Position numbers and translations under genes: made by a program. Positions 16,354 through 43,338 of a stretch of DNA of 61,304 bases are shown one piece after another (the stretch's first letter is position 1; every line of letters begins with the position of its first letter). This stretch comes from Salpingoeca rosetta. Taxonomy: Eukaryota; Protista; Choanoflagellata. The notes under the pieces were generated by a model. The model had not been told where the DNA came from and did not search any database. It was given only the letters and a program-made list of their open reading frames with translations. The DNA lies in NCBI GenBank assembly GCA_033442325.1, contig JAWQFM010000010.1, positions 96,104-157,407 of the forward strand. Direction: 5' to 3'.

Positions 16354-16867
16354 CTTTGTCCTCACAACAACAGCCAACTGTGTGTGTGTGTGTGTGTGAC
16401 GTGATATGTGACGATAGCTTGTCCTGCACAGCAAGCGAGATACAGCAACGGCTGATAAAATGAGCACCAAGCACGCCAAGCAAAAGCAACCACAAGCACA
16501 AGCAACCACAAGCAACCACAAGCAGGGCCTCCTCTGACTTGCACACACACACACACACACACATATTCAGAGAGGACAGGTGGCCAGCGATCTCTGCTGC
16601 CACCGCACGTCACACACCTCTCACACAAACAAACCAAACACACACAACCAACCAACCCACCAACAACCAACCGTCGCAGCAAGAATATGTGCTGCTACAC
16701 TTTGTGGTGTCGCTTATCAGGCCTCGCGACGGTCGCCGCGTCCTTCTTTCTCCACACAACACAACAACACAACCAACACAACACCTCCATCCGGCAAGCT
16801 GGACCCTTCCATCGGCGGGCCTTCCCGTGTACATCTTCGACGGCGCTCGAGCCGGCTATCACACTTC

Positions 16868-19289
16868 ATGTCATCGCTGACGCCATGCTGCTCCTCAACC
16901 AGCACAACCGCGATGGATGACGGCGACGGTGACACCGCGGATGATGGCTGGCCGCACCAGCACGGGCACCACCGAAGCTCGCAGGACGAGCCGAAGCACC
17001 ACCATATACCGTGGTGCCACACTCATCCCCACCACAAGAAGCACAGGCGAGGCGTGTCCCGTGAACAGCTACAAACCATCACGGGCTTGCAGCACTTGTT
17101 TGAAAGCAGCAGTAGCTCCGCAACTAGCAGCCACGACCTGCGCGCCAAGGCCATCAGCAAGCAGCAGTTCCTCGCCGCTTGGCCCATGACAGGGCTGCTG
17201 CCCGCCCGCCTGTTCACGTCCCTCGCAACATCCGACTTGGTGTCGATTCAAGACGTGTTTGGTGCCGTCCGCTGTCTCCTCGGTCGAGCACTCCACCCAA
17301 AGCTGAAGCTGCTGTACAAAATCTGTGACCTCGACGACAAAGGCGCCGTATCGTTGGAGAACCTGCACCATGTTCTGACTGCATGCATGTTACCAGACAC
17401 CAGCCCGCAGCACACCGTGGGCGATTTGCTGATCTCCGCGGAGGCCCTTGCACGCCTGCAGCGGCAGCCGCATGCCTGCGACCATGCAGCCAGGCCAGAC
17501 CGTGCGTCCGTGTCCAGCGAAGAGTTTGGGTGGCGCCACGACCAGGCCAGCACTGACGCCAACACAACCGGCCACGATCACGATGCCCAAAGTGAAGCTG
17601 CTCCAGTCGCTGAAACACAGCACCAGCACCAGCACCAGCACCAGCACCAGCACCAGCACCAGCGCAAGGACCACAGTGAAGTCCACCGCCTTCACCCTCT
17701 TGGCCACGGACGCCGGCAGCGAACTCGTAACGCTGATGATGGTGGTCGCACCGGCCCACCGCGATCACCATTCGTTGGTGACGACGATGGTGACGACGAC
17801 GGCGCAGATGATGGAAACAGCGATACGCATATGGAGTCGTTGTGCGGCGCTGAAACGGTGCCGGGAAGCGTGTTCTTCCCACGTGCACCAGCAGCCCAGA
17901 GCGGCAACAGCGACCACGATCATGATGCTGGTGCTCATGCTCATACTGAGCACGATGACATGAAGCGCGGTGGGACTGCCGGTACAGGTGGTGGTGGTGG
18001 TGCTGATAGCGGTGATGTGGAGGAACATCGGCGCTGGCGAGAGTACGTGTTGGACCGGCGCGGGTTTGCAGCGTGGGTGCAGACGAATCCACAGGTTGTG
18101 GATATGCTGGTGGCTGCCCTCTTGTGCCCCGACAGGCCAAGTCAGTTTTCTCGTGCAGAACGTCATGGTAGAGGCGATGATGGCGAGCATCGCTGTGAAG
18201 ACGCTCATCTCCTGAGCACAAACGAATCGACCACAGCAGGGACGACATTAACTACAAGGCATCAGCACGCACAAGACAGCATCTCCGCCCAACTCACTCA
18301 ACCACCATCGACCAACCGCGGACCTGGCGGTGATACCGCTCGTGATGCTGATAACCACCACCACCACCTCCACCATGGTGAGCCCTCGAGGAATCCAAGC
18401 GCCTCACTCTTCATCCGCATCACCAACGTGTCCGAGCCAGCGAGCCCATCTTCCTCCCCAGTCTCCACCGCACGTCACCACCACCACCAACACCACCACC
18501 AACGACAATCACAGCAGCAGCTCGGCCTTGCGAAGGCTGTGAGTGATTCAAGGCTGTCTGCGCACAACACCGTGCACAGCACGAACAGCACCGCAGCAAC
18601 GTCCCACCTGCCACCACTGCACGTTGCGTCGCGCCACCGCGGTCATCAGACCGCCGCATCGGCGCCGTCATCACCACGTCGTGTCTCGCCAGCCAACGCC
18701 CACCACCACGCCCACATCACCACCTCGTCACCACTGCTAGCAGAGCCAGTGTCACCACCACTACCACCATCCTCGGCAGCGCGCAGTCGCTCGCGCTCTC
18801 CATTTGGCGGAAGTCTCTTCAGCAAGTTGAGGGGGCGGGGTGATGTGGGCGTGGCTGATGGTGGATTGCATCATGCAGAGCGGACGCGCGTGGAGGTGGG
18901 GCAGCACAGGCGCGGCCGTGCCATGGGTGGTGAGGCATCGCAACAGCACCACGCCGCTGATGGCTCGCAAAGTGACTCCTACCCTGATGAGGCAATGCCG
19001 TCCCCGCAGCAGGGGGCTGCTGCTCGTGTGTTCAGGCCGGTCGCTCCCGCCACCGGTCAGCACTCGTCCGCAACATCAGCACCCACCACAACGCACAGCA
19101 GCAATAGCAACAGCGTCAGTAGCAGCAGCACCAGCGGCAGTATGAAGAGCGAGAAGGGGCCACGGTACCGGTGGGAGTGTCTGAGCAGCACGCTTGATGG
19201 TCGTGGGCCGCCACCAATCACAGACACAGCGTGCTGCTGCGTTGCAGACAGATCAGTCTACATCTTCGGCGGCCAAGTCGGGTACGCAG

Positions 19290-19360
<71 letters not shown>

Positions 19361-21370
19361 TGTTGCGTGCGTGTGTGTGTGTGTGTGTGTGCGAGTGGAT
19401 GTGCTGATGCACTTTTTCATCTCCACATCCCACTTCTCATCCTGCCCTCGTGTCCTCCCCTCTTCCTCCTCCAATCAACACCACGCCATCGACACGCCCC
19501 CCCACCCTCCACAAACACCAGTCGGCAGCTGAGCAACACGCTGTGGCAGTATGACCTGATTACGGAGATGTGGCTCAACATGGGGCCACGCGGTCCACGC
19601 TCATCATCAACGCTGTCATCCTCATCGTCAACACAAGCATTCCGCGCGCAGAGCGCTCACAGTCGTACAGACACACACGCACAGCGGCGCGTCGCACCAC
19701 ACCACAGCAGACACACCCCAACAACAGCAGTAACAGCAACATCAACAGCAGCAACAACAACAGCAACAACAACAACAGCAGCAACAGCAGCTCCGACGAT
19801 GACGACGACGACGACGACGAGAGGTGGGGAGCGCCGACGGAGCACGCCTGCCATCGTCGGTGGAATGAGAACGGAGGTGAAGAAGACACTCTGGCCCGGC
19901 CCGTCCCGCGAACACACACTCACAGCCATCGGCCAGCAGATGTACGCAGCACTCCTGTGTATGTGTGTATGTGTGCGCGTGTGCCTGTGTGTGTATGTTC
20001 ATGGACGTGTGTGTGTGTTCATGTGTGTGTCTGTGCGTCTGTGTTTGTGTCTGTTTGTGTCTTGTGTGTCTGTGTGTGTGTGTCTGTGTGTGTGTCTGTG
20101 TGCGTGCGTAGAGAAACGCGTGTGTGTACGTGCGTCGCCCTTGCCCTCCGTCACACTCAGTCTCCTTCTGCGTGTGTATGCATTGCTAACTCCCTCTGCC
20201 CTGTCACCATTCGTGGCGCAGGCTGGTGCTGTTTGGCGGGTACACCTCGCTGAGGTCGGGGGTAACGTGGCTGTTTGACATCCCGGACGAGCGCTGGTCA
20301 TGCCTCACGTGCGTCACAGTTGCACAGCACGAGACACCCACTGCACATGCCCACGCCCTCCTGCTGTTTGATGCACCTGCACATGTCCTGATCTCTGCCC
20401 AGCACTGGGCTGAAGTCGTCTTCAACCACACTCATGTACCCACCTTCACACACACACACACATGTACACATCTTCACACACGCACACGCACACACATGGA
20501 CACGCGCATGTGTACAGTGGGAAGCGATCGTCGCCCTCTGGACAGCGTGAAGTGGTGGATGTGGAATCCACTTCCGCATCTCAGTCGCAGTGGCCGCTGG
20601 CCCGCTGCTCACACTCCGCATGTGTTTGGCAGCGCGAGCACATGATTGTCTTTGGAGGACACATTCACGAATCATCTCAAGTCACCGACCAGGTGTATGT
20701 GTGTGTGTGTGTGTGTGCGTGCGTGTGTGTGCGTGTGTGTGTGTGTGTGTGCTCGGGAGGTTGCTCGCACTCTCTTCGTTTCTCTCAGTGCTTGTGCAAC
20801 AGTGCTGCGTTCACACCATCAAGCAAAGCCACTCATACTCTTTGTGTTGCATCATGTTGACAGCTGTGGATGTTTTCGCCACACGATGGCGAGTGGAAAC
20901 AACTCCAGCCTGCGGATTCGAGCAGCAGCAGCAGCAGCAATCGTCCTTCTCCGCGCATGCAGCACGCCGCATGCACCATCGGGGACCTCATGTACATATA
21001 TGGCGGTGTTGATCGACACAACCACCTGCTCGGTGCGTACGTTGCTGCACGCTACTAATAGTGTTGTTGACATGTCTTCTCATCCTCCTCCTCCTTTTCA
21101 CCCCTGCTGCAGCACGGGAACACTCACTCCGTCACTCCCTCATTCACTCGCCCTCCTCTCTTTGGTTGTTCCCGCAGGTGACTTGTGGCGCCTGGATTTG
21201 CGTTCGCTGCGCTGGTCACTGCTGTCGCCCTCTGCCCGCCCGTCCCCGGCTCCGCGCACCAAGCACACTCTCGTCACAGATGATGCCTTCCTCTTCCTCT
21301 TTGGCGGCTCTTCAAAGTACGCACTTGCTTGCCATGTGTGTGTGTGTGTTTGTGTGCGCGCGCGTGTGTA

Positions 21371-22768: not shown

Positions 22769-22819
<51 letters not shown>
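22769..22819 (-). repeat. (TGA)17 microsatellite whose first unit is the channel stop codon
   Basis: Plus strand reads (TCA)17 ending at 22819. Confidence 0.9.
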
Positions 22820-25800
22820 CCGCATGCGTCCAGTCTTGAGCGCAGAGAGCTGCGCGAGAATGTTCTGAAGCGCCTTCTCTGTGGACGCAGCAAATTGGTT
22901 GAAGGCAAACGCCAATTGCTGAACATCTGCTTCCACGTGCACGTCGTCCGTGTCAAAGCAGAGCGCCTTGTTCACGGGCATCATGGGCCCAATGGTGTTG
23001 GTCGTGTCCCACTGGCGCGCAATCTCAATCTCCACGCCCGTCAGCGGTTTGTGCGTCCGCCGCTTCTCCAACACGCGCAGGATGAGCCAGATGTAGTTCC
23101 AGACATTGTGGTCCTTGATCACGTGGCCCTCAAAACCCGTGTCGTCCGATGCCTGGATCTGGTCGCGGTTGAAGTTGCACACGAAGCACCGGCTCTCCTT
23201 CTCCGCAGCGATGGCCTCCGTCTCGGCACGGTACTCGCCAAACGAGTCAATGATGATACCGGAAACAATCGCAGCCATCACCAGCACAATCACCAGGAAG
23301 TAGAACAGCGCATACACAAACTCCCACGTGGACGCCTCCGAGCCAAACACGGGCGAGGAGTAGAAGCCGTAGTACAGGTGGTCCTTCAGGCACTCAGACA
23401 GCGGCTGGTCCCTCCTGCACGCAGCAGCAGAATCAGGAAACTCATACTTGCCAGCAAACGCCTCCCGCCCAATGAGGGTGAGGGCATAGATGATGAAGAA
23501 GGTCAGGACGAACGTGCCAATCAGCTTGGACAGGTTGACGCGAACCGCTCGCAGCACAAGCGTCATCACCTCAACGCGCAGCACCACATCAAAGAGATGG
23601 AAGCAGAAGAACTGAAAGTGTGAAATCCCCACAGCGCTCAGAATCAGGTACAGCACATAGTAGGTGTAGCTTGCGTGGAACACCCAGTGGATGGGGAAAA
23701 GCAGAATCTTCCTCGTCAGCGACAAGCCCTCGCTTGCCTCGTGCCACCGCTGTATGTCCACGCGCAGCGGCGCCAGCGACTGCCCAGCAATAATGAGCGC
23801 AGCCAGCGCGGTGTGCACGGTGGCGGCGGTGCGTGGTATGGCCTGGTCTTCTGGACGCTTGGGTGGCGGTCCAAACACAACCCAGCCGTTGATGAACAAG
23901 GCGAGGAGGAAGCAGCACAGCAGCAACACGCGCTGGTGCGACACAATGCGAGACAGCCAGTAGCTGCCGGCCTTGTTCTCAAACTCCATGACTCGAATCA
24001 GCAGTGGCGCCTCGTCAAAGAAGGTGTGCAGCCGCTGTTCGGGCGTCAGCAGCACGCTGTTGTTGATCATGGCACTCCGCAGCTGCCGCACCTGCAAACG
24101 GTCCTTGGTCTGGCGAACAACGTCCGGGACCTGCATGTACACGGGCTGCAAGCTGCCGTTGTGCACCAGCTCCACCCGCGCCACGCGCTGCCGGATTGAG
24201 GGCGCCGCCTTGTCCTCCCACGCCATGAGCAACCGCGCCACTCGCGAGCCCTGTGCATCTGCCAGCTCGCTCAGCATGCGCATCATCATGTAGTACAGCA
24301 GCGCCACATCTTCATCGTGGAATTGCGCCTGTTTTGGTACGAGCGACACGGCCTCAAACGCTTGGTTTCGCTCATTCTTGTTCTTGCGGCGCTGCTGGCG
24401 TGCGCTCACGTAGTGCTCGTTCAGCATCCGGAACATGGCACACTGCTTGAAATCGGTGCCCTGCGCTCCCGCGTTCTCCGGGAACAGCTGCACACACAGC
24501 ACGTCCAGCACAGAGTCCTTCTTCAGCCGCCCTTCAAGCACGCTCAAGAGAAACTGCAGCACGGCCGCCTCGCACTGCTCGTCCAACACGTCGAGCGCCT
24601 CGGCCAGCTGCCGCGCCCCGCGTGCAGCCATCAGGTGCTCGCTTGTCAGCAAAGCACGCGCCTGTGCGATGTCATCCTCATCGTCGCCATTATTGTCGCG
24701 TCCTGCGCCTGAAACAGCGCGGATGCCACTGGCAAACGCAGCGCCAAAGCCAAGACCAGCAGCAAAGCTGCCCTGCCGCTTAGGCTTCTTTTCCTCGGCG
24801 GCCGCGCTGTTTCCGTCGGCACTGGTGTTGTTGCCATCCGCGCCATCACCGTAGTCATAGTCTACCTCCTCGTCCTCCTCCCCGCCCTCTTCTCCACCGC
24901 CAGCATTGTCGACGTCGCTATCACCCTCATCATCGAGCAGGCTGTCGTCGTGTGCGTCTTCCAGTTCAAGCTCCTCCACGCCCTCGTTCTCCGCCATCAC
25001 GCTGGGGCCGCGAATCAGCGTGGAAAGCTTGCTGCTGCGCTTGCGCTGCGTTTGCGGGCCACCGCCCAAGCCAAACATGCCTCGTTTCTGCTCGGAGTCA
25101 TCAAACAAGGCATTCCGATCAATGCCAAAGTGGTCGCACCACGAGTCCAGCGTCTCCAGCGCTTCGTCGCACTGCGCGTTGAGCGTGAAGAGGTTCACAT
25201 TCTCATTGCGATGAATCGTGCTGCTGCGCTTCAGGCCCGAGTGCGACTCTGCGTGTGACGGCACAGACCGGCGCGGCGCGTGCTGGGCGTCCGGGTCGTT
25301 GAGATACTGCAGGAACAGCAGCACGGACTTGGTCGCCTTGTGCTGCAGAATCAATGTCTGGTTGTCCCTGTTTGGTCCACTGGCCAGCGCGCCGAGTGCC
25401 CCAAACAGCTGCTGCATGAACGTGATGTCGTTTGCTTCGCGCCTCAGGTCATTGTGCAGGTGCAGCACAGCGTCGGGCTTGCCCTCCTCGCACGAGCTTC
25501 CAATGGGCGCGCTGCTCTTGGCGCGAACAATGTGGTCCATGCCCTGCACCAGGCGACCAACCTCGGAGACAACGGCCGTGCCCTGGCCCTCCGCAGACCG
25601 CAGCAGGTTCTGCATGTCACGGTAGCAGCCGTCGCACGTGGCCTCGATGAAGCCGAGCACGCGCGTGCCAATCGCCATGTCCAGGTCCTCGGAGTCCTGG
25701 TTTCGCTTTAGCCGCTGCAGCGGGCCCTCACGCTCGCGCTCCGCCAAATCCGTCACCATGCCCTGCAGGTGCCGGTGCAGCGCTGCCATGCCCCTGGCCG

Positions 25801-28800
25801 CCTTTGGACCAGACTCAAGCGCGCGATAGAACACCTCCTGCGCACAGAGGCTGCGGTTCCCGCTCACGCCGCTGGGGCCCTGGCGGTCGGCAGCAGCGTC
25901 GGGCTCGTCGTTCACTTCAAACACGCGCGGGGTTGCCTTGAGCAGCTGCCAGCCGAGCTGGCACGCCATCAGCACCAGGCGGCGGTCGTCGGAGTCAAGC
26001 AGGTGCAGCACCATGTCTGCTGCGCCCATGCTCAGCAGGCACGATGCAATGGAGGTGGCCTCCTCGTTGCTGGCCGCCGTCTTCTTGGGCGACGTCAGCA
26101 GGCTGCACAGCATGCCCAAGAAGCCAAGCATCACATCCTCCACCTCTTCCTCATCCACATTTTGGAACCCGTCACCGCCACCGCCACCAGCACTACCGTG
26201 CTCCTGGCTATCCTCGGGCGCGTCAATCGTGTTTGGGTCATCACCAAACGCGATAATGCGTGACAGGCACTGCTGTACATCCACGGTCACGTCCTTCACG
26301 GTGGGGCGGGCAAGCGTGTCCAAGAACCCAGCAGCGAGCGATCGGCTGGAAACGTTGCCCTGTTGCCGGCGCGATTGCCGTTCCTCAGCCCTCAGGGCGT
26401 CCAACAGACCCTGTGTTGGCATCTCGCCACGCTCGTCGCGCAGCTTTTCTTCCAGTGCCTCCAACTCTTCCTGGTCCTCTTCGATTTCGCCCAGCAGGCC
26501 TGACCTTACAACATCAATCAGGCCCCACATGCCGCCGAAGCTGAGCTCAACTTGCATGAACCGCATCCAGGGCAGGGTGGGCCGCTTGCTTGACTTGGCC
26601 AGCAGACGACGCACGCGCCCACGGAAACGGTCGAGGCGCGCTGTCTCTGCGTTTGCCTTCCACGCAGCGCGCGTTTGCCCTGGCCCGCTGCTGGACAAAC
26701 CGTATGTGTTTGGCTGAGAGAAGAAGCGCTGCTCTGTGATAATGCATGCGGGGATGTCCGCATCCGCCTCAAGCACGGCCAGTTCTAGTGTTTGATCGAG
26801 CACATGCACGGCAAGCATGCGGTGGCCTTGAACAACAGCACACGACATGTCTGCCTCCACCACGTTGCGCCGCTGCCGCAGGGCGTCGAGCATGGCGGTG
26901 AGCAGGCGTGAACAGGGCCCGGCGAGCGCCTGCATGGACGGGTCGTTGAGGACGTGGCGCGAGAGGGCGCGGCACACGTTGAGTGCGGTGGGCAGCAGCG
27001 ACTCAAACAGGTACTTGTCCAGCTTGGTGATGCTGCAATGCACGGAGGCGAGCGATTGAAGCTCAGTTGCCAGCGGTATGCACAGCATCTCCCACGTGTC
27101 GACGTTGTCGTTCCCGCCGTCACCACTGCCATGGGCACTTTCTGCGCCCACCTCATCGCTGGGCTCCAGCTCGGCCTCCAGAGACTCCTCAGTCAGGTAC
27201 ACGTCACGCATCAGGGTGAGCAGGCGGGCCTTGAGCGTGACGGGCAGCGCCGCCCCATTCACAAACGGCTGCACCAGCACTGGCAGGGGCACAAGCTTGG
27301 ACACGAGCGTGCCAATCTTCGAGTTGGCGCGGGCGAGGGTGGCCAGCAGCGACAACAGCTGCTCAAAGTACGCGCACAGCCGCTCTTCCTTGCGAGAGAG
27401 CACAGAGCCAATGGTGTTGAGCGTTGGGATCGAGCCGTGCAGGTCCTGGCCAGCCTTGGTGTACGTGGCGACCAAATACGCAACAAAGTGCACCCCGGCA
27501 GTATGTGCCGGGTAGAGGTATGCCTTGTCCTCCTCGGCGCCCAGCAGCTTCTCGCCAATGGCCTCCTGCATGTCGCGCGACGGCGTGCCCGCGGGCGCAA
27601 CCAGCGTCTCCAGCAGCTGCACAAAGGCCACGGTGCGGCAGCGGGGCTCCTGCATGAAGCAGGTGAGCAGCGGGTCGACGTTGCCCTCGCCAACGACGTG
27701 CTCCTCAATCAGCTCGGGCTGCCCATCGAAGATGCGGTGCAGCACGCGCTCGGCGTGGATGCCGTATGTGCACGCCTCGACGAAGAAGGCGATGTTGCGC
27801 GGGTGGCTCAGCAGCTCCTGGTTGTTTCTGTTGTCCCAGCAGAAGAAGGCAAGGAACTCAAAGCACGAGCCAAAGAACTCCTGCACGCGCTCGCTCTCCA
27901 GGGCCTTCTTGAAGGTGGCACCCGACAGCCGCTGCTGCACCAGGTTCAGCACGGCCTTGTATGCGCTGGCGTTACGCATCATCTCCTGCCGCCCATGCTG
28001 TGGCTCCACCACCACATCTGGCTGGTTCCAGGGCAGCGCTCCACGCCGGCCACCACCGCGTGTTGCTCCTGGTGCTGCTGCTCGTGCTGCTGTTGTTGTT
28101 GTTGTTGCTCCTGGTGCTGCTGCTGCTGCTGCTGCTGTTGTTGTTGCTGCTGTTGCTGCTGTTATTGCTGCGGGGTTGTTGAGGAAGTCTGAGGCTGGCT
28201 TGTCGTTGACGGTGACACACTCTGCGCACATCCATTGGATGTCCTTGGTCAGGTTTCTGGCGACAGTGGGCAGGTCGTCGTTGTCCTGCTGCTTGAGGAT
28301 GAGCATGAGCTCCTCCAAATGCTCCAGCGTGGCCTCGTCTCTGCTGTCGGAGATGACCACCACATTTGAGAGGCGCGCCAGCAGGCACCCCTTGATGTTG
28401 AAGTTGCGGAGGAGGAGGTTGAGCGCCGCAACGCGCAGGCCGTCGCTCGGGTACACGGTCAGGGCCAGTAGCAGGTGCGCGGCCTGCTTGCGGGTGAAGC
28501 CCTGGTACTCGAGGAAGTGGTGGTTGTCGCCCGTCTGCTTGATGATGTCAATGTCAAGCAGGGAGCGAGTGCTCTGCTGCTGTTGCAGGTCTGCTCCACC
28601 TTCATCTCCCTGCTGCTGCTGCTGCTGCTGTTGCTGCTCTTGTTGTTGCTGGCGGCGCTTGCGCCCCTTGCGCTTGTTCTGCTCGCACTCCTTCTTGTAG
28701 GCGTGCAGGAGTTGGGTGACAATGTCGTCCAGGTGCACGTCAACGCACGCATCGAGAATGCGGCAGAGCACCGTCTTTGCGCGCACGACGACGTCAAGGG

Positions 28801-31536
28801 CCGCGGTGGGCGTGAGGTCGTCCGTGTCACTCGGGTGCGAGCGCATCAGCAGCACCACCAGCCTGCGCGTCAGCTGCTGCCTTGCCTCGACGTCGTTGTA
28901 CAGCCCCCTGTTCACCATGGCCAGGCACAGTCGCAGCACCTGTTCCGTGAGCATGTTGGCTTGCACCTCTGCCTGCTTGAGCTCGGCAATCTCGGGGCGC
29001 TTGCTGTCTGCACCGGAGTAGTAGCCTGTCGTGTACGAGAGCAGACCCTTCTGCGAGAGGTAGGCCTCCACCCAGTTGACCACCTCGTCCACGCGGAAGA
29101 GACGATCTGCAACGGCCCTGAGCTTGGCGTGCGACTTGTGGTTGGCCAGGTCGTTCCAGCGCCGGTTGGAGTGGTCCACCTCGGGCAGGTCGTCGCCGTC
29201 AATGTACAGGTTGACAAGGAGCGTGCAGAAGCGCGCCTTGATGTGTGCTGGCAGGCTGGACTGCAGCACACCCATGATCATGGGGTAGGGCGCCCGCCGC
29301 GCGTCACGCAGCTCGTCCTGGCAGTTGCCCTCCAGGCACAGCTGGGCGTAGAGCTGGAGCATGGAGTCAAAGTACTCGAGGTGGTCCTGGTCCTTGAGGT
29401 ACTCCTGCAGCGGCATGGTGACGACGCGCCACTGGTGGAAGGGCTTGCCTCGCGTGGGCACGCGCGTGGAGATGGTCATGTTTCCATCGCTGTCGATGGT
29501 GGTGACGGGCAGGATGTCCGCTGCGGGCGCGTCTGGGGCAAGGGTGAGCTCACGGATGATGTTCTGGATGGAGGGGATGGCCGAGCCGTCGACGGAGCAG
29601 AGGGAGGCGAGGAGGCCGAGGTACTGCTCGAGGTCGCTCATGGTGTGTGCTTCGTGGATGAGGGAGATGTAGAGGTTGACGGACCGCTTCGTGACGCGGT
29701 TGAGCAGGATGTGGTTGTTGCGCACAATGTTGTCCAGGGTGTCAGCAATGTGCCAGTGGATGTTGTCGATGCAGCTGATGAGCCGGCACTGGTTGACCAT
29801 GTCGGTGAGGTAGGCGTCCGCCATGACCAGGCCCACGTGCACGTTGCCGTGGCACAGGTAGCTGATGAGGCGGTAGATGTCGCGGCACAGCTTGTTGAAG
29901 CGGCGGCACTTTGGCTGCGCCAGGCGCGTGCGCCAGCCCTTGCCCCAGTCCGCGCAGTGTGCGCCCTGGAACGGCACGCTGACCACGGTCATGAGGGGCG
30001 TGTGCACCTGCAGGTCAAAGAGGATGTTTTGGTGCAGGGTGTTGGTACGGCCCACCTCGTCCTGCCCGTCCTCAATCTTGTCCTCGGAGCAGAACTGGAT
30101 GAGCGCCTGGATGCTGTTTCGCGCGCGCTTGAAGAGCTCGCCGTGCCGTGGGCTGCACACGTCCGAGAGCACCCGCTCCTCTGCCAGCTGGGCCAGGATC
30201 TTGGCGTGGCCGAGCGCAAAGTAGAAGTCGCGGATGTCCTGCTGGTGGACGCTGTGCAGGGAGAATGCGTCCTCATCCCGGCGCTGCTGCACGAGCACGG
30301 AGCGCACAAAGGTTGTGTCGTCGCCCTGCTGGTTCTCGTCCACGGCTGCCTCGTCCGTGTTCACGTGCAGGTACTGGCCGGACCCGCGTACGTAGAAGAA
30401 GGCGCTGTATGGGATGCGGAGGTCCTCTTGGCGCGACATGATGGCGACGGCGGCGGCGGTGGCGCTGTCCTCGCTCTCCTGCTCCGCCGCGTGTGTAGAC
30501 TCAAGCAGGGAGAAGAGGCCTGATGTCTGCCGTGTCTGAGCCGGTGCCATGACACCAGTGGAGGTGATGGCGCTTGCGTCGAGGTACTGGTCTGTGAGGA
30601 CGTTCTTGAGCCGCACGTGGTCGGTCCACAGCACGGGCCTGCCGCCGCGGCGCTGGGTGTCCTCGAGCTCCACCTGCCAGATGGAGCTTGCGTCGTGGTA
30701 GTCGCCCGGTTGGTTGCCTGCCCCGATGGCGCGGAGACAGACGGTGTTGTCGTGGCCAAGGAAGTCATCCTCGTCGCCGTCGCCAATCTGCCGCGCAACG
30801 ACGAGGAACCCGTTGGCCTCGTGGTGGTACAGGCGCACAAAGTCGCCGCCCTTGAGCACGTGGATGAAGGCCTCCCCAGAGACGTTGTAGGGGGCGAAGA
30901 GGCGGATGCGTATGCCGGATGTCTCGGACGGCCCGCAGGCGAGGAGGACCTTGGACTGGTCGAGGCTTGAGGAGGAGGTGAGGAAGGTGCGGTTTCCGTC
31001 GAGGATGAGCTCGTTCTGGAAGACGACCTGGTCGTTGAGGAGGACCGGGTCGCCGATGGCCCTGATCTTGAAGCGCGGCAGGAGGCGAAAGTGGCTGGCG
31101 CCGGCGCTGGTGGCATCGAGAGCCACGGAGTACACGCCGCCAACGGCGCGGGTCTGGCGCGTGATGCTGCGCTGGGTGCTGCGGTGGATGATGCGCACGA
31201 CGTCGCCGTACTTGAGGCTGGCGCCCTCCGGCAGGTCCGTCACCGCCTTGATCTGGAAGATGCATGCCTGCTCAAAGTTTGGGATGGTGGTGGGTGCCGT
31301 GTCTGCCTTGGTAGAGGTGGCGTCAGCGGTGGAGGAGGAGGAGTAGGTTGCATTGGTGCTGTCGCCTTGCTGCTGTGTTGCTTTCTGGTGCTCTTGCTGT
31401 AGTTTGGTGGGTTGGAAGACGGAGATCTCCTTTGACGAGAGCAAGTCCACGCTCGCCACACCACCCGCACTCTGCACAAACAGTGACACAAAGTCACCGT
31501 TGCTCAGCGTGCTGCGGTCGACAATGTCGTCCGCCA

Positions 31537-31537
<1 letters not shown>
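22817..31537 (-). CDS. Divergent inositol-trisphosphate/ryanodine receptor family channel, intronless, 2906 aa
   Basis: Single ORF. Suppressor/beta-trefoil (LSNGDFVSL, FEQACIFQI, LKYGDVVRIIH, FRLLPRFKIRAIGDPV), MIR (LKGGDFVRLYHHEANGFL, SIWQVE, VRLKNVLTDQYL), RIH (FCWDNRNNQELL), RIH-associated (CDGCYRDMQNLLR, SGPNRDNQ), six TMs, GIIIDSFGEYR and C2H2 CFVC..H..H. Confidence 0.95.
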
Positions 31538-31538
<1 letters not shown>

Positions 31539-31605
<67 letters not shown>

Positions 31606-31616
31606 TGTGTGTGTGT
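31539..31616 (+). repeat. (GT)n microsatellite; (CA)n on the coding strand directly before the channel ATG
   Basis: Direct reading. Confidence 0.95.
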
Positions 31617-38960: not shown

Positions 38961-41900
38961 ACACACACACACATATCAACGCGTGCACTTCCACGCTTTC
39001 CCTGTCACTTTCACTCACATGCTTGCATGCACGCATCTTTACCCACCCCACCTCTCTCCTATGTTCGCTAGCTCTGCTCGGATGTACACGGCACACTGGA
39101 CAGCATGGCGCGTGTGCTTGAAGCGCACGACGTCCCGTTCTTCCCCAAGCACCATGTCGACAAGATACACAACGGCAGTCACAATGACACTACGACCGGA
39201 CACAAAACGACACGGGAAAACACGCTACTCTCTTCGCTTGTCGACCTGTCTCCAATTCATCGCATGATGACTGCGTTTGGGTGTGACGATCGAAATGAGG
39301 ACAGCAGCAAAGACAAACAACATCTTGAAGGAGATCACAGGACACCACCGGCTCCACTGTTGACAACCACCACCGCGCACGTGGAAGAGAAGGTGAATGA
39401 CATCCGCCGCAACAACGCAACGACCAAGCTACCGTTCCAACAACAGTCACAACCCCAACACAGCCGAGTGCGACGAAATCAAGACCCTGTTGTACATGCA
39501 GGGCAGTGCACGCTGGCGAGCGTGGTCGATGGCTCGTGTCCTGGTCCGACAATCAACGGCAGCCTTGTAATCTCAGTCGAGGACACCGAGTCGCCCGATG
39601 AAGAAACAGATGCAAGCACATTGCGCAGCATCTCTCCGCGGGTGACCAGGCTTGTATTGAATGGGCACATTGAAGCAGAAGCGCTGGAGTGGGTTGTGAC
39701 CAACGGCAATTGGACGATGTGCCGCTCTTTCTCGGCCATGGGCGTGCAGTTTCCCACGCTTCAGTTGAGCGTGCTCAACCCAATGACAAGCGTCGATACC
39801 ATCAATATCTGCGACAGCAAAGTGCTTCGAGCACTCGGCACCGACGGCTTTGCCCTCTCACACGAGCTCGTCCACATGGACTTGCACAACAATTCCCTCA
39901 CATCTGTCCCAGACGTATCTGGCATGACCTCGCTGTCAACCCTCAGCTTGCACAACAACCGCATCCGTGGCATCGCAAAGGACGATTTCAAGGGCTTGCC
40001 AGTCCTGCAGCAGCTGCTTCTTGGCGAGAACCTCATTTCTGAGATTGAATCACGGGCATTCGATGACCTCACTCAGCTGCAGGTGCTGACCCTGTTTGCC
40101 AACGAAATCAGCACCATCCATTTCGACCTGTTCCATCGTCTCATGAGCCTCACAAAGCTTCAGCTGCATCAGAACCCCATCACAGAGCTTGACGCTCACG
40201 TTTTTGCTGGGCTGCCCAAGCTGGATCATCTGAGTCTCGAGGACATGCTCCTCACCAGCTTGCCAGCAACGCTATTCCGAAAGAACACGCGCCTCACTGT
40301 GTTGAACTTGGCGGGAAACTTCATCACGTCCCTGCCCAAGACCATCTTCTCTGGTCTGTCATATCTGCAGGGGCTGCAAATCTTCAACAACCGCCTGTCT
40401 TCGCTGCCACCAGGCGTACTCGAGGACTTGGCGGCGCTGAAGGTCCTTGACTTGTCGAGGAACGAGCTGACGTCCATGCCTGACGACCTACTTCAGTTCA
40501 ACCGCTTTCTCGACGAGTTCTTCTGTGCAAACAGCCATCTCACCCAGCTTCCACCCAATTTGTTCGCCAACACCCCAGACCTGCGACTGGTGTCTTTCGC
40601 CAACAACGATCTTCACTCCATCGACAATGTGCTTGCAGGAGCGTCCCTGCCTTCCTTGGTTGCCCTTAACCTCAACAACAATCACCTGACGGAGTTGCAT
40701 CTGTCCAAAGAATTGCCTGCCTTTCGCAGGTTTGGCTTGAGCAGCAACCCCATGCAGGAGCTGCCAGACGTCACCCTCGCGCCTGCCCTGAAAACCATGC
40801 GGCTGCAGAACCACGAAATCAAGCACATGGACTTGGCGCCACTTCTTCGTTTGTCCAACCTCGACATCCTTGAGCTCGATGCGTCTCCCCAAGCAGAGTC
40901 CAAGGCAGTGTTGACGGACGCCAACATCGGTAGCGTCGCGCCGTTATCAGTGCTCAGTTTGGAGAATGTCGACGTCACTTCCGTGATCCCATTACTTGAA
41001 CGCCTCCCGTCGCTGAGTCTCGATGCCCTGCATGTGGGCTGGCCGGGCGCCAGCAACGCCACGCTCCCAATCAGCAAGGTGTGCATGCTGCTCGCAAAAA
41101 GCGTGCGAGAGCTTCGCATCGCCAACACGAACTACGAAGCCATTGAGTTGTGTGCTGACAGAACATTCCACTCCATCCTTCTGAACGACAACGAGCACCT
41201 GCGGTCTGTCACCGTCCACAATCCGCTGCGTGAGCTGAATATGTCCGGGTGCACCCACCTCACTTCTATCGACGCTCCTCCGATTGACATCCTCGACATC
41301 AGCAACACCAATTTCCTGCCCGTTGCTGCGCTGTGTACACGCTGGGGCAGACGCATTCTCTTCGCCCGCAACTTGGCCGGAACCATTGACACACGACAAG
41401 CGGCGGCAACTGCACGCAACTGCCTTCAGCGAGCGGATGTGATAGATCTTTCTGGCAACACGTGGTTGGGTCAACTGGAGGAGATCAATCGCGTGACAGA
41501 GAGATCAGTTGTCTTGTCAGAAGAACAAGATTGGACGGCTGACCTGGTCCCTCTTCCAAGCCGGTCCACCCCTCCCATCCTCCAACTCACTGATGCGCCG
41601 ATTGAATGTGCGCTTCAGCTGTCAAACCGGGATCTGCGTCGACAGAGTGATCTCTTCACATTTACGCCGCAGATTGTGTTCTCCTTCCACTGCACGTGCG
41701 CGCGGGGTTTCAAGATGACATCAGATGGACGGTGTGTGTTAGATGAGCCCAACATCGCTGGCGTTGCCGCTGGCTCCGTGATTGGCGGGCTGTTCTTCGG
41801 CCTGTTCGTGGCGTGGCTGTCACGCCACTACCGTGGCCTGACGAAACGCATCGGCCTGCAGGAGCAGTTGCTGGTGGAGATGGACGAGGAGGTGATGGCG

Positions 41901-43338
41901 CTGAAGAAGGCGTGGGAGATTGAGTATGGTGAGCTGAGACTTGTTGAGCGTGTTGCTGCGGGTGCTTTTGGCGTGGTGTTCAAGGCGGAGTGGGACACAG
42001 TCATGGTGGCAGTGAAAGTACTGCAGCAAGGGGTGATGATGTTTGACGAGAACACGGTGCAGGAATTTGAGAAGGAGGTGGAGTTCCTGCAACGGACACG
42101 CCACCCGAATGTGGTGCGGTTCTTTGGGGCGGGCACAGACCCCAACGGCAGCCCGTTCCTTGTGCTGGAGTTTGTTGCTCTGGGATCGCTCAAGGACCTG
42201 CTGGGGAAGGACATGGAGAATGTGTTGAGGGAGGCGGAACAAGGGGAGCGAAGTAGTGAAGATGGTGCAAGGCAGGATGTAACAACATCTGACATCGTGG
42301 GTGAAGAATTGACGTTGGTGAGCACTGAAAGCGATAGAAGGCCTGAGACGATGACTGTGTGGGACTTGAAACTGCGGCTACTGCGCGATGTCGCCAGTGG
42401 CATGGCCTTTACCCACAGCCTCGACCAGATGCACCGGTGGGTTGATTGTATGTGTGTGTGTGTGTGTCTGTAATGTGTTTGTTTGTTTGTTTGTTTGTTT
42501 GTTTGTTTGTTTGTTTGTTTGTGTGCCTGCAAGCATCAAGTCCCTGCTTCACCCAACCCCACGAGCTCCTGCTTCGACTCACCCCACCATGACCACAACC
42601 GTTCACTGCCAACAGAGACTTGAAGAGCGTCAACGTGCTTGTTTCATCATCGCTTCGTGCCAAGATTACGGATTTCGGGTCCATCCGCCGGTGCTTCACC
42701 CGTGACAGGCACCAACGACAGCGCACCCGCCTATCGTCCAGTCGTGATGATGATGGTGATGGCCCCGAATACAACCAGCAAGCTGGACTGCAAACGATGG
42801 CGGGCACGGCGCTGGCAGCTGGCGTGGGCACACCGCTGTACATGGCACCAGAGGCACTGACGGGTGACAAGTGTAGCTTCGAAGCAGACATCTTCAGCTT
42901 TGGCGTGCTCATGTGGGAGGTGGCGACCCAGCGCACCCCCGACTTGATTGAGCAGGAGAAGGGCAGTGACTTCAGAGGGCCACTGCTGACAGCCATTGCG
43001 AAGCTCTTGACGGAGGGGAAGCGCCTCAAGTTTGACGACAGCGAAAAAGCTGGTGAGAAGCTTATTGTGTGAGTGCGTCAGTGCGTGAGTGTGTGTGAGC
43101 TTGTGAGTGTGTGAGTGTGTTTGTATGTAGGTATCTGCATGTGTGTGTGTCTGGGTCGCTTGCGGATTCTTCTCCTCACCCACTCGCCTACCACGCATCT
43201 CTCGCCCACCACACATCACCCCCCCCCCTTCTCTCAGCCATCCCCGAGTGGTTCCAGTCGCTGACGTACAAGTGCATGGCGCAGAACCCGCATGAGCGCC
43301 CGTCGTTTGGAGAATTGAAAGACCACCACTTTGCTTGA
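38682..43338 (+). CDS. Leucine-rich-repeat receptor kinase: signal peptide, LRR ectodomain, Cys/EGF-like module, TM, tyrosine-kinase-like (TKL) kinase
   Basis: Exons 38682-38798, 39072-42436, 42616-43052 and 43238-43338 are in frame. LRRs of the form LxxLxLxxNxIxxI; CTCARGFKMTSDGRC; TM IAGVAAGSVIGGLFFGLFVAWL; kinase motifs AAGAFGVV, VAVK, HR|DLKSVN, DFG, GTPLYMAPE, DIFSFG and ERPSF. Confidence 0.93.

What the first reader, a model, noticed from the sequence alone, without database searches (positions are those of the whole stretch)
23200..23460. IP3R/RyR-family channel without the GGGxGD selectivity filter
Seen: the pore segment reads ECLKDHLYYGFYSSPVFGSEASTWEFVYALFYFLVIVLVMAAIVSGIIIDSFGEYR. 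Known: IP3Rs and RyRs have GLRxGGG[V/I]GD here and an Asp at the start of TM6 (YDLLFF/FDITFF). Here the filter is replaced by GFYSSPVFG, the filter-to-TM6 loop is shorter and that Asp is Ala. TM6 looks more RyR-like (AI..G.IID.FGE.R) and the C2H2 site is intact. Inference: altered ion selectivity or a non-conducting regulatory subunit. The intact 2906-codon ORF argues against decay.
Basis: partly seen in the sequence, partly recalled or inferred. Interest (0 to 1): 0.8.

Follow-up and report, generated by a model that had tools for sequence, protein, structure and literature searches.

The report
RyR/IP3R-like channel with alternative pore
This choanoflagellate gene encodes a giant calcium-release-channel relative whose ion filter is not decayed but swapped for a different short motif, conserved in related channels across many protist groups and never tested functionally.

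Summary
An intact 2906-codon ORF (22817-31537, minus strand) encodes an IP3R/RyR-superfamily protein. Its pore loop reads HLYYGFYSSPVFGSE where RyR1 has HMYVGVRAGGGIGDE.

Contigs from four public runs (four studies) cover the site without indels, and no reading frame gives GGGxGD.

The change is not a one-off loss:
- Two Salpingoeca rosetta paralogues and proteins of S. kvevrii and S. urceolata share HLYYGF...PVF.
- About half of the best channel-domain homologues carry the related consensus H-L-D-Y-G-[FL]-R-x-x-P-V-W. They come from Diphylleia, Rhodelphis, a dinoflagellate, Paulinella and a ciliate.
- With the filter columns removed, a careful tree separates all such rows from all GGxG rows (98/93). 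A sister relation of the choanoflagellate clade to RyR is not rejected (AU p 0.19).

The S6 gate, the luminal cysteines and the zinc finger are kept. The IP3-binding residues and the second Ca2+-sensor glutamate are lost.

Best reading: a conducting cation channel with an alternative filter and an unknown gating signal. No member has been recorded from.

First readers flagged the same kind of gene on other pieces of this genome; no follow-up is on record.

The parts
22817..31537 (-). Single uninterrupted ORF of 2906 codons plus stop: IP3R/RyR-superfamily channel gene
   Evidence: ORF list and translation. Pfam Ins145_P3_rec, MIR, RIH (1.3e-29); RIH_assoc at 28.0 bits, just under its 28.5 cut-off; weak Ion_trans.
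23228..23395 (-).
   Evidence: Exact string located.
23369..23401 (-). Pore helix (aa 2713-2723), ...SECLKDHLYY
   Evidence: AlphaFold2 model helix 233-243, block pLDDT 94-97. H2720, Y2723 and G2724 are conserved in 43, 38 and 47 of 49 PVW-type rows (its labels are one too low).
23330..23368 (-). Filter loop (aa 2724-2736), GFYSSPVFGSEAST, standing in place of GVRAGGGIGDE plus 8 further residues in RyR1
   Evidence: PDB alignment. Non-helical 13-residue stretch at pLDDT 94-97. P2729 in 36/49, V2730 in 28/49 and W/F2731 in 44/49 rows.
23192..23329 (-). S6 pore-lining helix (aa 2737-2782) with G2760-I-I-I2763-D2764-x-F-x-x-x-R2770
   Evidence: AF2 helix 257-302. These columns are 48-49 of 49 in PVW-type rows and align to RyR1 G4934, gate I4937 and D4938.
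23108..23188 (-). C2H2 zinc-finger of the C-terminal domain (C2784, C2787, H2805, H2810)
   Evidence: Invariant columns C304, C307, H325, H330 of A2. They align to RyR1 C4958, C4961, H4978, H4983.
23390..23422 (-). Luminal S5-pore loop with the two cysteines (C2707, C2716)
   Evidence: Both are invariant columns in alignment A1 across canonical and non-canonical proteins.
23184..23287 (-). 104-nt block identical to the S. rosetta paralogue locus L001 (89 nt with L002): probable gene-conversion tract over the C-terminal half of S6 up to the first zinc-finger Cys
   Evidence: Exact-word scan. Synonymous difference falls to 0.05-0.15 here against 0.5-0.7 elsewhere. A separate 104-nt unitig of higher depth sits at exactly these coordinates in run X1.
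25598..25636 (-). First Ca2+-sensor motif: RyR1 C-E3893-G-H3895 reads C-D1969-G-C1971 here
   Evidence: Alignment of 53 central domains. RyR1 motifs identified.
25358..25393 (-). Second Ca2+-sensor motif: RyR1 T-E3967-Y-I-Q3970-G-P reads G-A2050-L-A-S2053-G-P here (Glu lost)
30008..30763 (-). Region homologous to the IP3-binding core, with the ligand-contacting basic residues replaced
   Evidence: Alignment to IP3R2/IP3R1 chains: R265->G, R269->C, R504->T, K508->N, R511->F.
31540..31613 (-). (CA)n dinucleotide repeat directly upstream of the start codon
   Evidence: Seen in the alignment of the 5' flank.

Best explanation
The gene encodes a full-length, selectively maintained member of the IP3R/RyR superfamily. 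It belongs to a branch whose pore loop is not GGGxGD but a shorter proline-containing motif. The family consensus is H-L-D-Y-G-[FL]-R-x-x-P-V-W followed by acidic or polar residues; here it reads H-L-Y-Y-G-F-Y-S-S-P-V-F-G-S-E.

Inferred, not shown: it forms a tetrameric endomembrane cation channel. The narrow part of the pore would be built by the S-S-P-V-F backbone and the Glu2734 ring, which aligns with RyR1 E4900. The RyR-type S6 gate (I2763) and cytosolic acidic rings (D2764, E2767) are kept.

Its permeation properties probably differ from those of RyR and IP3R. It is not gated by IP3, and the canonical cytosolic Ca2+-activation site is degraded, so the opening signal is unknown.

It is one of three S. 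rosetta paralogues. These may co-assemble, because a gene-conversion tract keeps the S6 bundle region identical at the DNA level.
For: Shown:
- Intact ORF and domain set.
- RyR/IP3R channel fold at mean pLDDT 92.9, with the filter loop at 94-97.
- The new motif is shared at 12 of 16 positions with S. kvevrii and S. urceolata proteins that are only about 35% identical in the channel domain.
- A related P-V-W motif occurs in 49 of 105 channel domains, from Diphylleia, Rhodelphis, Polarella, Paulinella and Pseudocohnilembus.
- With the filter columns excluded, one branch separates the 49 non-GGxG rows from the 34 GGxG rows (UFBoot 98 / SH-aLRT 93).
- S6 G-I-I-I-D-x-F-x-x-x-R is 48-49 of 49. The luminal Cys pair and the C2H2 ligands are invariant.
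- dN/dS is 0.42-0.47 against the paralogues.
- No indel or alternative frame restores GGGxGD.
- IP3-site and Ca2+-site substitutions.
- The conversion tract.

Inferred: conduction, cation preference, co-assembly.
Against: - No member of this branch has been recorded from or solved, as far as the searchable literature shows.
- The window protein departs from the family consensus at two conserved positions: pore-helix Asp to Tyr2722, and the Arg of G-x-R to Tyr2726.
- dN/dS near 0.45 is only moderate constraint. Around the filter (aa 2712-2756) pN is 0.23-0.24 against pS 0.29-0.31.
- With IP3 and Ca2+ sites lost, no gating ligand can be named.
- Transcription was not shown: the RNA label of runs X1-X3 is a guess.
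- Phylogenetic placement is not firm. Holding the choanoflagellate clade with RyR costs 10.9 lnL (AU p 0.19), and on the shorter alignment that arrangement was 12 lnL better than the quick tree.
Confidence: 0.55

Rival explanations
1. Non-conducting or modulatory subunit. The protein keeps the IP3R/RyR scaffold but no longer conducts. It acts as a regulatory or structural partner of conducting subunits, or as a scaffold on endomembranes.
For: The canonical filter, the IP3 site and the second Ca2+-sensor Glu are all lost in the same protein. Constraint is moderate, omega 0.42-0.47. From memory of an abstract, not read here: the Capsaspora IP3R-B orthologue neither bound IP3 nor released Ca2+ when expressed (Alzayady 2015, not held). 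S. rosetta also has three ITPR-like proteins and one RyR-like protein as possible partners.
Against: The replacement motif is itself strongly conserved over very long distances, which a dead pore would not require. The S6 gate residues and vestibule acids, which matter only for a gated pore, are nearly invariant. The branch is too divergent from canonical subunits (20-25% identity in the channel domain) for co-assembly to be an obvious expectation.
Confidence: 0.2
2. Classification rival. The choanoflagellate clade is the holozoan sister group of true RyRs (the 'IP3R-B/RyR' lineage). It remodelled its filter independently, so the resemblance to the protist P-V-W channels is convergent or ancestral rather than a sign of close kinship.
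For: PDB sequence scores are better for RyR1 (3.7e-24) than for IP3R1 (1.5e-19). The pore helix H-L-Y-x-G and S6 A-I..G.IID.FGE.R match RyRs. The AU test does not reject the clade (p 0.19), and on 264 columns the constrained tree was 12 lnL better than the quick tree.
Against: The careful tree on 366 columns puts all non-GGxG rows on one side of a 98/93 branch, with RyR nested among GGxG rows. The P-V-[FW] signature, which was left out of the tree, independently links the choanoflagellate proteins to the protist group. The protein has none of the SPRY or RyR-repeat domains, whereas S. rosetta has a 5340-aa RyR-like protein that does. Both clades sit on long branches, so attraction could favour this rival.
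Confidence: 0.25
3. Artefact or decay: a sequencing or assembly frameshift hides a normal filter, or the gene is a pseudogene.
For: None found. The idea comes only from the rarity of non-GGGxGD filters in animal channels.
Against: No indels in contigs of four runs from four studies, and 20 runs in seven studies hold the stretch. No frame encodes the motif. The same motif occurs in two paralogues and in two other species. The ORF is 8.7 kb without a stop. dN/dS is below 1.
Confidence: 0.02

Closest known systems
Salpingoeca rosetta 'cardiac ryanodine receptor' XP_004990026.1 and XP_004992365.1 (automatic names)
   Same: 56-63% identical in the C-terminal region and 70-80% at DNA level. Both carry the same HLYYGFYSSPVF pore loop, the same S6 and the same zinc finger. 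They share a 104/89-nt identical block over S6.
   Different: They lie at different loci, on other scaffolds. After PVF their loop reads APADAD instead of GSEAS. Their published gene models are split over several reading frames and are 270-430 residues shorter. No paper in the searched library cites these accessions, and they are not in the S. rosetta list of Zheng and Mackrill 2020.
Ryanodine receptors (RyR1-3; solved structures such as 5gky, 8xlh)
   Same: Best sequence and fold matches for the channel domain (E 4e-24; TM-score 0.64-0.69). They share the H-[LM]-Y-x-G pore helix, the S6 G-x-I-I-D-x-F-G-E-x-R with the gate Ile, the C2H2 finger and the Thr of the Ca2+ site.
   Different: The window protein has no GGGIGD and a loop to S6 that is 8 residues shorter. 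It has no SPRY, RyR-repeat or RR_TM4-6 domains and is 2906 rather than about 5000 residues. Ca2+-sensor E3967 is Ala and H3895 is Cys.
IP3 receptors (IP3R1-3; for example 3jav, 6dqj)
   Same: Same size class and domain order: suppressor/IP3-binding-like N-terminus, MIR, RIH, RIH_assoc, 6-TM channel, zinc finger.
   Different: IP3-contacting R265, R269, R504, K508 and R511 are all replaced. GGGVGD is absent. The Ca2+-sensor Glu is lost.
Paramecium Ca2+-release channels with aberrant pores (CRC-III, CRC-V, CRC-VI; Ladenburger and Plattner 2011, PMC3213138)
   Same: These are protist IP3R/RyR relatives for which it is already published that the filter region shows variants or 'practically no similarity', and that the pore-to-TMD6 loop is short or elusive. 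Their permeation is unknown. A ciliate protein (Pseudocohnilembus) carries the P-I-W form of the motif.
   Different: Whether those Paramecium groups are the same branch was not tested, because their sequences were not fetched. That paper does not define a conserved alternative motif or report it outside ciliates.
Capsaspora IP3R-B (Alzayady et al. 2015, Mol Biol Evol 32:2236; recalled from its abstract, paper not held)
   Same: A holozoan IP3R-like protein reported not to bind IP3 and not to release Ca2+, from a lineage said to be related to RyR. That functional profile matches what the window protein's residues suggest.
   Different: Its pore sequence could not be checked. Kinship with the window protein is untested.

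Membership tests
IP3R/RyR superfamily | N-terminal Ins145_P3_rec + MIR + RIH domains and the central RIH_assoc domain | tested here: met
   Pfam E-values 4.7e-07, 9.6e-11 and 1.3e-29. RIH_assoc scores 28.0 bits, just under its 28.5 cut-off.
IP3R/RyR superfamily | C-terminal 6-TM channel domain with pore helix, long S6 and C2H2 zinc-finger C-terminal domain | tested here: met
   AF2 model at pLDDT 92.9. Foldseek top 50 are all RyR or IP3R chains, TM-score 0.60-0.69. The Cys/His ligands are invariant.
IP3R/RyR superfamily (canonical animal-type pore) | GGG[VI]GD selectivity filter | tested here: not met
   SSPVFGS stands opposite AGGGIGD. The motif is absent in all six frames.
IP3 receptor proper | Basic IP3-contacting residues (IP3R1 R265, R269, R504, K508, R511) | tested here: not met
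   They read G, C, T, N and F in the HMMER alignment to IP3R2 and IP3R1 chains.
IP3 receptor / RyR | Cytosolic Ca2+-activation site (RyR1 E3893, E3967, T5001 with H3895, Q3970) | tested here: not met
   D1969, A2050 and T2833, with C1971 and S2053. The second Glu is lost. Most non-choanoflagellate PVW-type rows keep E..H and E..Q.
Ryanodine receptor proper | SPRY domains, RyR repeats, RR_TM4-6, about 5000 residues | tested here: not met
   None of these Pfam families is hit, and the length is 2906 aa.
Ryanodine receptor lineage (sister-group relation) | Groups with RyR in a channel-domain phylogeny | tested here: inconclusive
   Not in the best careful tree, but not rejected: AU p 0.19 and p 0.71 on the shorter alignment.
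'P-V-W type' branch of IP3R/RyR-like channels (unnamed; defined here) | Pore loop H-x-[DY]-Y-G-x-x-x-x-P-[VI]-[WF], with a short loop to S6 | tested here: met
   H2720, Y2723, G2724, P2729, V2730 and F2731 are present. Column counts are 43, 38, 47, 36, 28 and 44 of 49.
'P-V-W type' branch of IP3R/RyR-like channels (unnamed; defined here) | Falls on the non-GGxG side of the tree when the filter columns are excluded | tested here: met
   One branch, UFBoot 98 / SH-aLRT 93, found in 98% of bootstrap trees. SH-aLRT 98 on 105 rows. The caveat is the AU tests above.
IP3R-B (Alzayady 2015) | Orthology to Capsaspora or invertebrate IP3R-B | not testable with these tools
   The paper is not held and no IP3R-B sequence was retrieved by name.

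The most novel reading that the evidence does not exclude
The P-V-W channels are a third, ancient branch of the IP3R/RyR superfamily, present before the main eukaryote supergroups split. They would have their own permeation chemistry, built on a proline-stiffened filter with an aromatic residue in place of a glycine carbonyl ladder. In choanoflagellates this branch has shed both IP3 and Ca2+ sensing, so it would answer to a still unknown signal. The three S. rosetta paralogues would form heterotetramers whose S6 bundle is kept compatible by gene conversion.
Probability: 0.3. Interest if true: 0.75.

Novelty: new variant of a known kind. Interest (0 to 1): 0.55.

Why it matters
GGGxGD is usually treated as the hallmark of intracellular Ca2+-release channels. 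This gene shows that the closest living relatives of animals keep at least three large IP3R/RyR-like genes with a different, conserved pore loop, alongside ordinary IP3R-like and RyR-like genes. The same pore type recurs in at least five other eukaryote groups.

If these proteins conduct, they are an uncharacterised class of organellar channel with possibly different ion selectivity and an unknown trigger. If they do not, they are a conserved non-channel use of the largest known channel scaffold.

Either result bears on how IP3R and RyR arose. S. rosetta is genetically tractable, so the question can be tested directly.

Tried and rejected
- **Trypanosomatid origin.** I suspected it from the long intronless GC-rich ORF. 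Rejected: the nearest proteins are S. rosetta's, and trypanosomatid IP3Rs keep GGGXGD (Prole and Taylor 2011).
- **Same locus as the annotated S. rosetta genes.** Rejected: only 70-80% DNA identity.
- **Conserved 5' leader shared with L001.** The 60-nt exact match upstream of the ATG is only a (CA)n repeat.
- **Word-based protein search with the C-terminal piece alone.** It found one fragment.
- **Exact look-up of five other window ORFs to name the organism.** Nothing was found.
- **phmmer of the central domain against PDB.** No hit. The Ca2+-site motifs were mapped through a RyR1 fragment and a multiple alignment instead.
- **Numbering RyR1 residues by a fixed offset.** This failed upstream of the divergent region.
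- **ESM Atlas feature search.** It gave only generic Ion_trans clusters, after three busy or size errors.
- **Alzayady 2015.** It could not be read, and a guessed PMC id turned out to be an unrelated paper.
- **The quick tree on 264 columns.** It was shown to be suboptimal by the constrained search, so a careful tree on 366 columns was built.
- **A metagenome contig of P0150.** It gave no taxon.
Full report
**Observation.** The window holds one uninterrupted ORF of 2906 codons on the minus strand, 22817..31537, starting at ATG.
- Pfam finds Ins145_P3_rec, MIR and RIH (1.3e-29). RIH_assoc scores 28.0 bits, just under its 28.5 cut-off, and there is a weak Ion_trans match at the C-terminus.
- phmmer of the last 527 residues against all PDB chains gives RyR1 at 3.7e-24 and IP3R1 at 1.5e-19.
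- The printed alignment puts window HLYYGFYSSPVFGSE opposite RyR1 HMYVGVRAGGGIGDE. It opens an 8-residue gap in the loop to S6 and puts Ala2743 opposite the Asp of FDITFF.
- The four zinc-finger ligands are invariant alignment columns.

So every factual element of the finding is correct.

**Artefact test.**
- No reading frame of 22800-24500 encodes a GGGxGD-like motif.
- Twenty public runs from seven studies hold the stretch.
- Contigs of four runs from four studies lie on 22829-25800 with no inserted or deleted letters. No variant letter is listed between 23228 and 23395.
- These are assembled contigs, not raw reads, so they show presence rather than the absence of rare variants.

**Organism and copies.** The nearest proteins are two Salpingoeca rosetta entries that NCBI names 'cardiac ryanodine receptor' (XP_004990026, XP_004992365). 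They are 56% and 63% identical in the C-terminal region.
- Their loci (L001, L002) are only 70-80% identical to the window gene at DNA level, so the window holds a third gene.
- A 104-nt block, window 23184-23287, is identical to L001.
- In run X1 the assembly graph has a separate 104-nt unitig of higher depth at exactly those coordinates (table 8). That is what two genes sharing this block in one organism would produce.
- This agrees with earlier notes of the scan that the genome is S. rosetta.
- Zheng and Mackrill's table of S. rosetta homologues lists three ITPR-like proteins and one 5340-residue RyR-like protein, but not these accessions. No paper in the searched library cites them.

**The filter is replaced, not lost.**
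- Both paralogues read HLYYGFYSSPVF.
- An exhaustive phmmer search with the channel domain found 2648 proteins at E <= 0.001.
- Next-best hits after the paralogue representative (P0002), from S. kvevrii and S. urceolata, are about 35% identical. Both read CLRDHLYYGFMG[PS]PVF, 12 of 16 positions shared with the window.
- Very many further hits lack GGGxGD and carry H-L-D-Y-G-[FL]-R-[GS]-[AP]-P-V-W.
- Named sources of these are Diphylleia rotans, Rhodelphis marinus, the dinoflagellate Polarella glacialis, Paulinella chromatophora and the ciliate Pseudocohnilembus persalinus.

In 49 such rows the conserved columns, in window numbering, are as follows (its printed labels are one too low):

| Position | Count of 49 |
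|---|---|
| H2720 | 43 |
| Y2723 | 38 |
| G2724 | 47 |
| P2729 | 36 |
| V2730 | 28 |
| W/F2731 | 44 |

Acidic or polar residues follow the motif. S6 G2760-I-I-I-D2764-x-F-x-x-x-R2770 is present in 48-49 of 49 rows. The window protein departs from this consensus at Tyr2722 (usually Asp) and Tyr2726 (usually the Arg shared with canonical G-x-R).

**Phylogeny.** The columns from the filter to the start of S6 were removed for all trees.
- A quick tree of 105 channel domains put 49 non-GGxG rows on one side of an SH-aLRT-98 branch.
- A careful IQ-TREE run (LG+C20+F+G4 by PMSF, 83 rows, 366 columns) separated all 49 non-GGxG rows from all 34 GGxG rows by one branch. Support was UFBoot 98 / SH-aLRT 93, found in 98% of bootstrap trees.
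- The window protein sits with its two paralogues (100/100). That trio sits in a 7-row clade with the two other Salpingoeca species and two metagenome proteins (100/100).
- The placement is not beyond doubt. Forcing this clade together with RyR costs 10.9 log-likelihood units and is not rejected (AU p 0.19). On the shorter alignment the forced tree was even 12 units better than the quick tree.
- Both groups have long stems.
- The P-V-[FW] signature was excluded from the tree and so counts as independent support for the best tree. The H-L-Y-x-G pore helix and the RyR-like S6 speak for the rival.

**Structure.** AlphaFold2 with an 83-row alignment gives mean pLDDT 92.9 and pTM 0.79 for residues 2481-2906.
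- The pore helix is 2713-2723, a 13-residue non-helical loop is 2724-2736 (block pLDDT 94-97), and S6 is 2737-2782.
- The Foldseek top 50 are all RyR1/2/3 or IP3R1/3 chains, TM-score 0.60-0.69.
- Only a monomer could be modelled, so pore radius and lining were not assessed.

**Gating sites.**
- *Ca2+-activation site.* In RyR1 this site reads C-E3893-G-H3895 and T-E3967-Y-I-Q3970 (motifs identified; the residue roles come from published RyR/IP3R structures, my knowledge). It is kept in canonical rows and in most non-choanoflagellate P-V-W rows. In the window protein it reads C-D-G-C and G-A-L-A-S, so the second Glu is lost. The C-terminal-domain Thr is kept.
- *IP3 site.* In the alignment to IP3R2 and IP3R1 chains, R265, R269, R504, K508 and R511 are G, C, T, N and F. 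This agrees with the separate first-reader note on this window.

The protein therefore cannot be filed as an IP3 receptor. It also lacks every RyR-specific domain.

**Selection and conversion.**
- Against the paralogues, dN/dS is 0.47 over 587 codons and 0.42 over 236 codons (Nei-Gojobori). pN is lowest (0.14-0.27) across S5 to S6.
- The two annotated paralogues differ by dS 0.10 with omega 0.19.
- Synonymous difference collapses to 0.05-0.15 over residues 2742-2801, against 0.5-0.7 elsewhere. This matches the 104-nt identical block, and a gene-conversion tract over the S6 bundle region is the simplest explanation.

**Literature.**
- GGG[VI]GD is described as the conserved filter of animal IP3R and RyR, with Leu variants in oomycetes and Paramecium (PMC7399828).
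- Trypanosomatid homologues keep GGGXGD (PMC3194816).
- Ladenburger and Plattner reported that several Paramecium channel groups have variant filters. CRC-VI shows practically no similarity there, and the loop to TMD6 is short or elusive in CRC-III and CRC-V. Permeation was left open (PMC3213138).
- I found no paper that defines the P-V-W motif, reports it in choanoflagellates or tests such a channel.
- The most relevant paper, Alzayady 2015, is not held.

**Verdict.** What it shows is a conserved alternative pore type rather than a lost filter. The general idea of protist IP3R/RyR relatives with aberrant filters is published. The specific motif, its breadth, its presence in three copies in a choanoflagellate together with the loss of IP3 and Ca2+ sites, and the S6 conversion tract appear not to be. 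I rate it a new variant of a known kind, of moderate interest. The functional question, conducting or not and with what selectivity, stays open and is experimentally approachable.

Noticed in passing
window 23184-23287 (also lower synonymous divergence at about 22990-23090): A 104-nt stretch is identical between this gene and the S. rosetta paralogue locus L001 (89 nt with L002), inside DNA that is otherwise about 77% identical. Synonymous difference is 0.05-0.15 here. This is probably gene conversion over the S6 bundle and the start of the zinc finger.
   Followed up: partly
window 23397-23486 and 25190-25260: In three DNA-type runs (X4, X5, X8) a second contig form at about half the depth matches 30 nt on each side but not the 90 or 71 nt between. 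It also carries G23528T and A23543T. Run X1 shows only the window's form. This is either a divergent allele or a further near-identical copy. The first site is the luminal S5-pore loop, just upstream of the pore helix.
   Followed up: no
window 31540-31613: A long (CA)n dinucleotide repeat, about 35 units with one interruption, abuts the start codon of the channel gene.
   Followed up: no
L001 3001-11539 and L002 3001-11586 (S. rosetta GL832980.1, GL832971.1): The two annotated paralogues are split over three or four reading frames. Their published models (2637 and 2479 aa) are shorter than the sum of their ORF pieces; L001's three pieces sum to about 2900 aa (L002's were not summed). The P0002 model lacks the S1-S4 region. 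These may be short introns or old assembly frameshifts. The window gene has no interruption at all.
   Followed up: partly
window 25358-25636: The canonical Ca2+-sensor residues of IP3R/RyR are degraded in the whole choanoflagellate clade (first Glu is D, F, A or M; His is C, V or M), while most other P-V-W-type proteins keep them.
   Followed up: partly
window 16580-20278 (+) and 39105-42473 (+): Two further long ORFs (1232 and 1122 aa) lie in the window. The exact sequence of the 39105-42473 ORF (with four shorter window ORFs) is not in the protein collection; the 16580-20278 ORF was not looked up.
   Followed up: no
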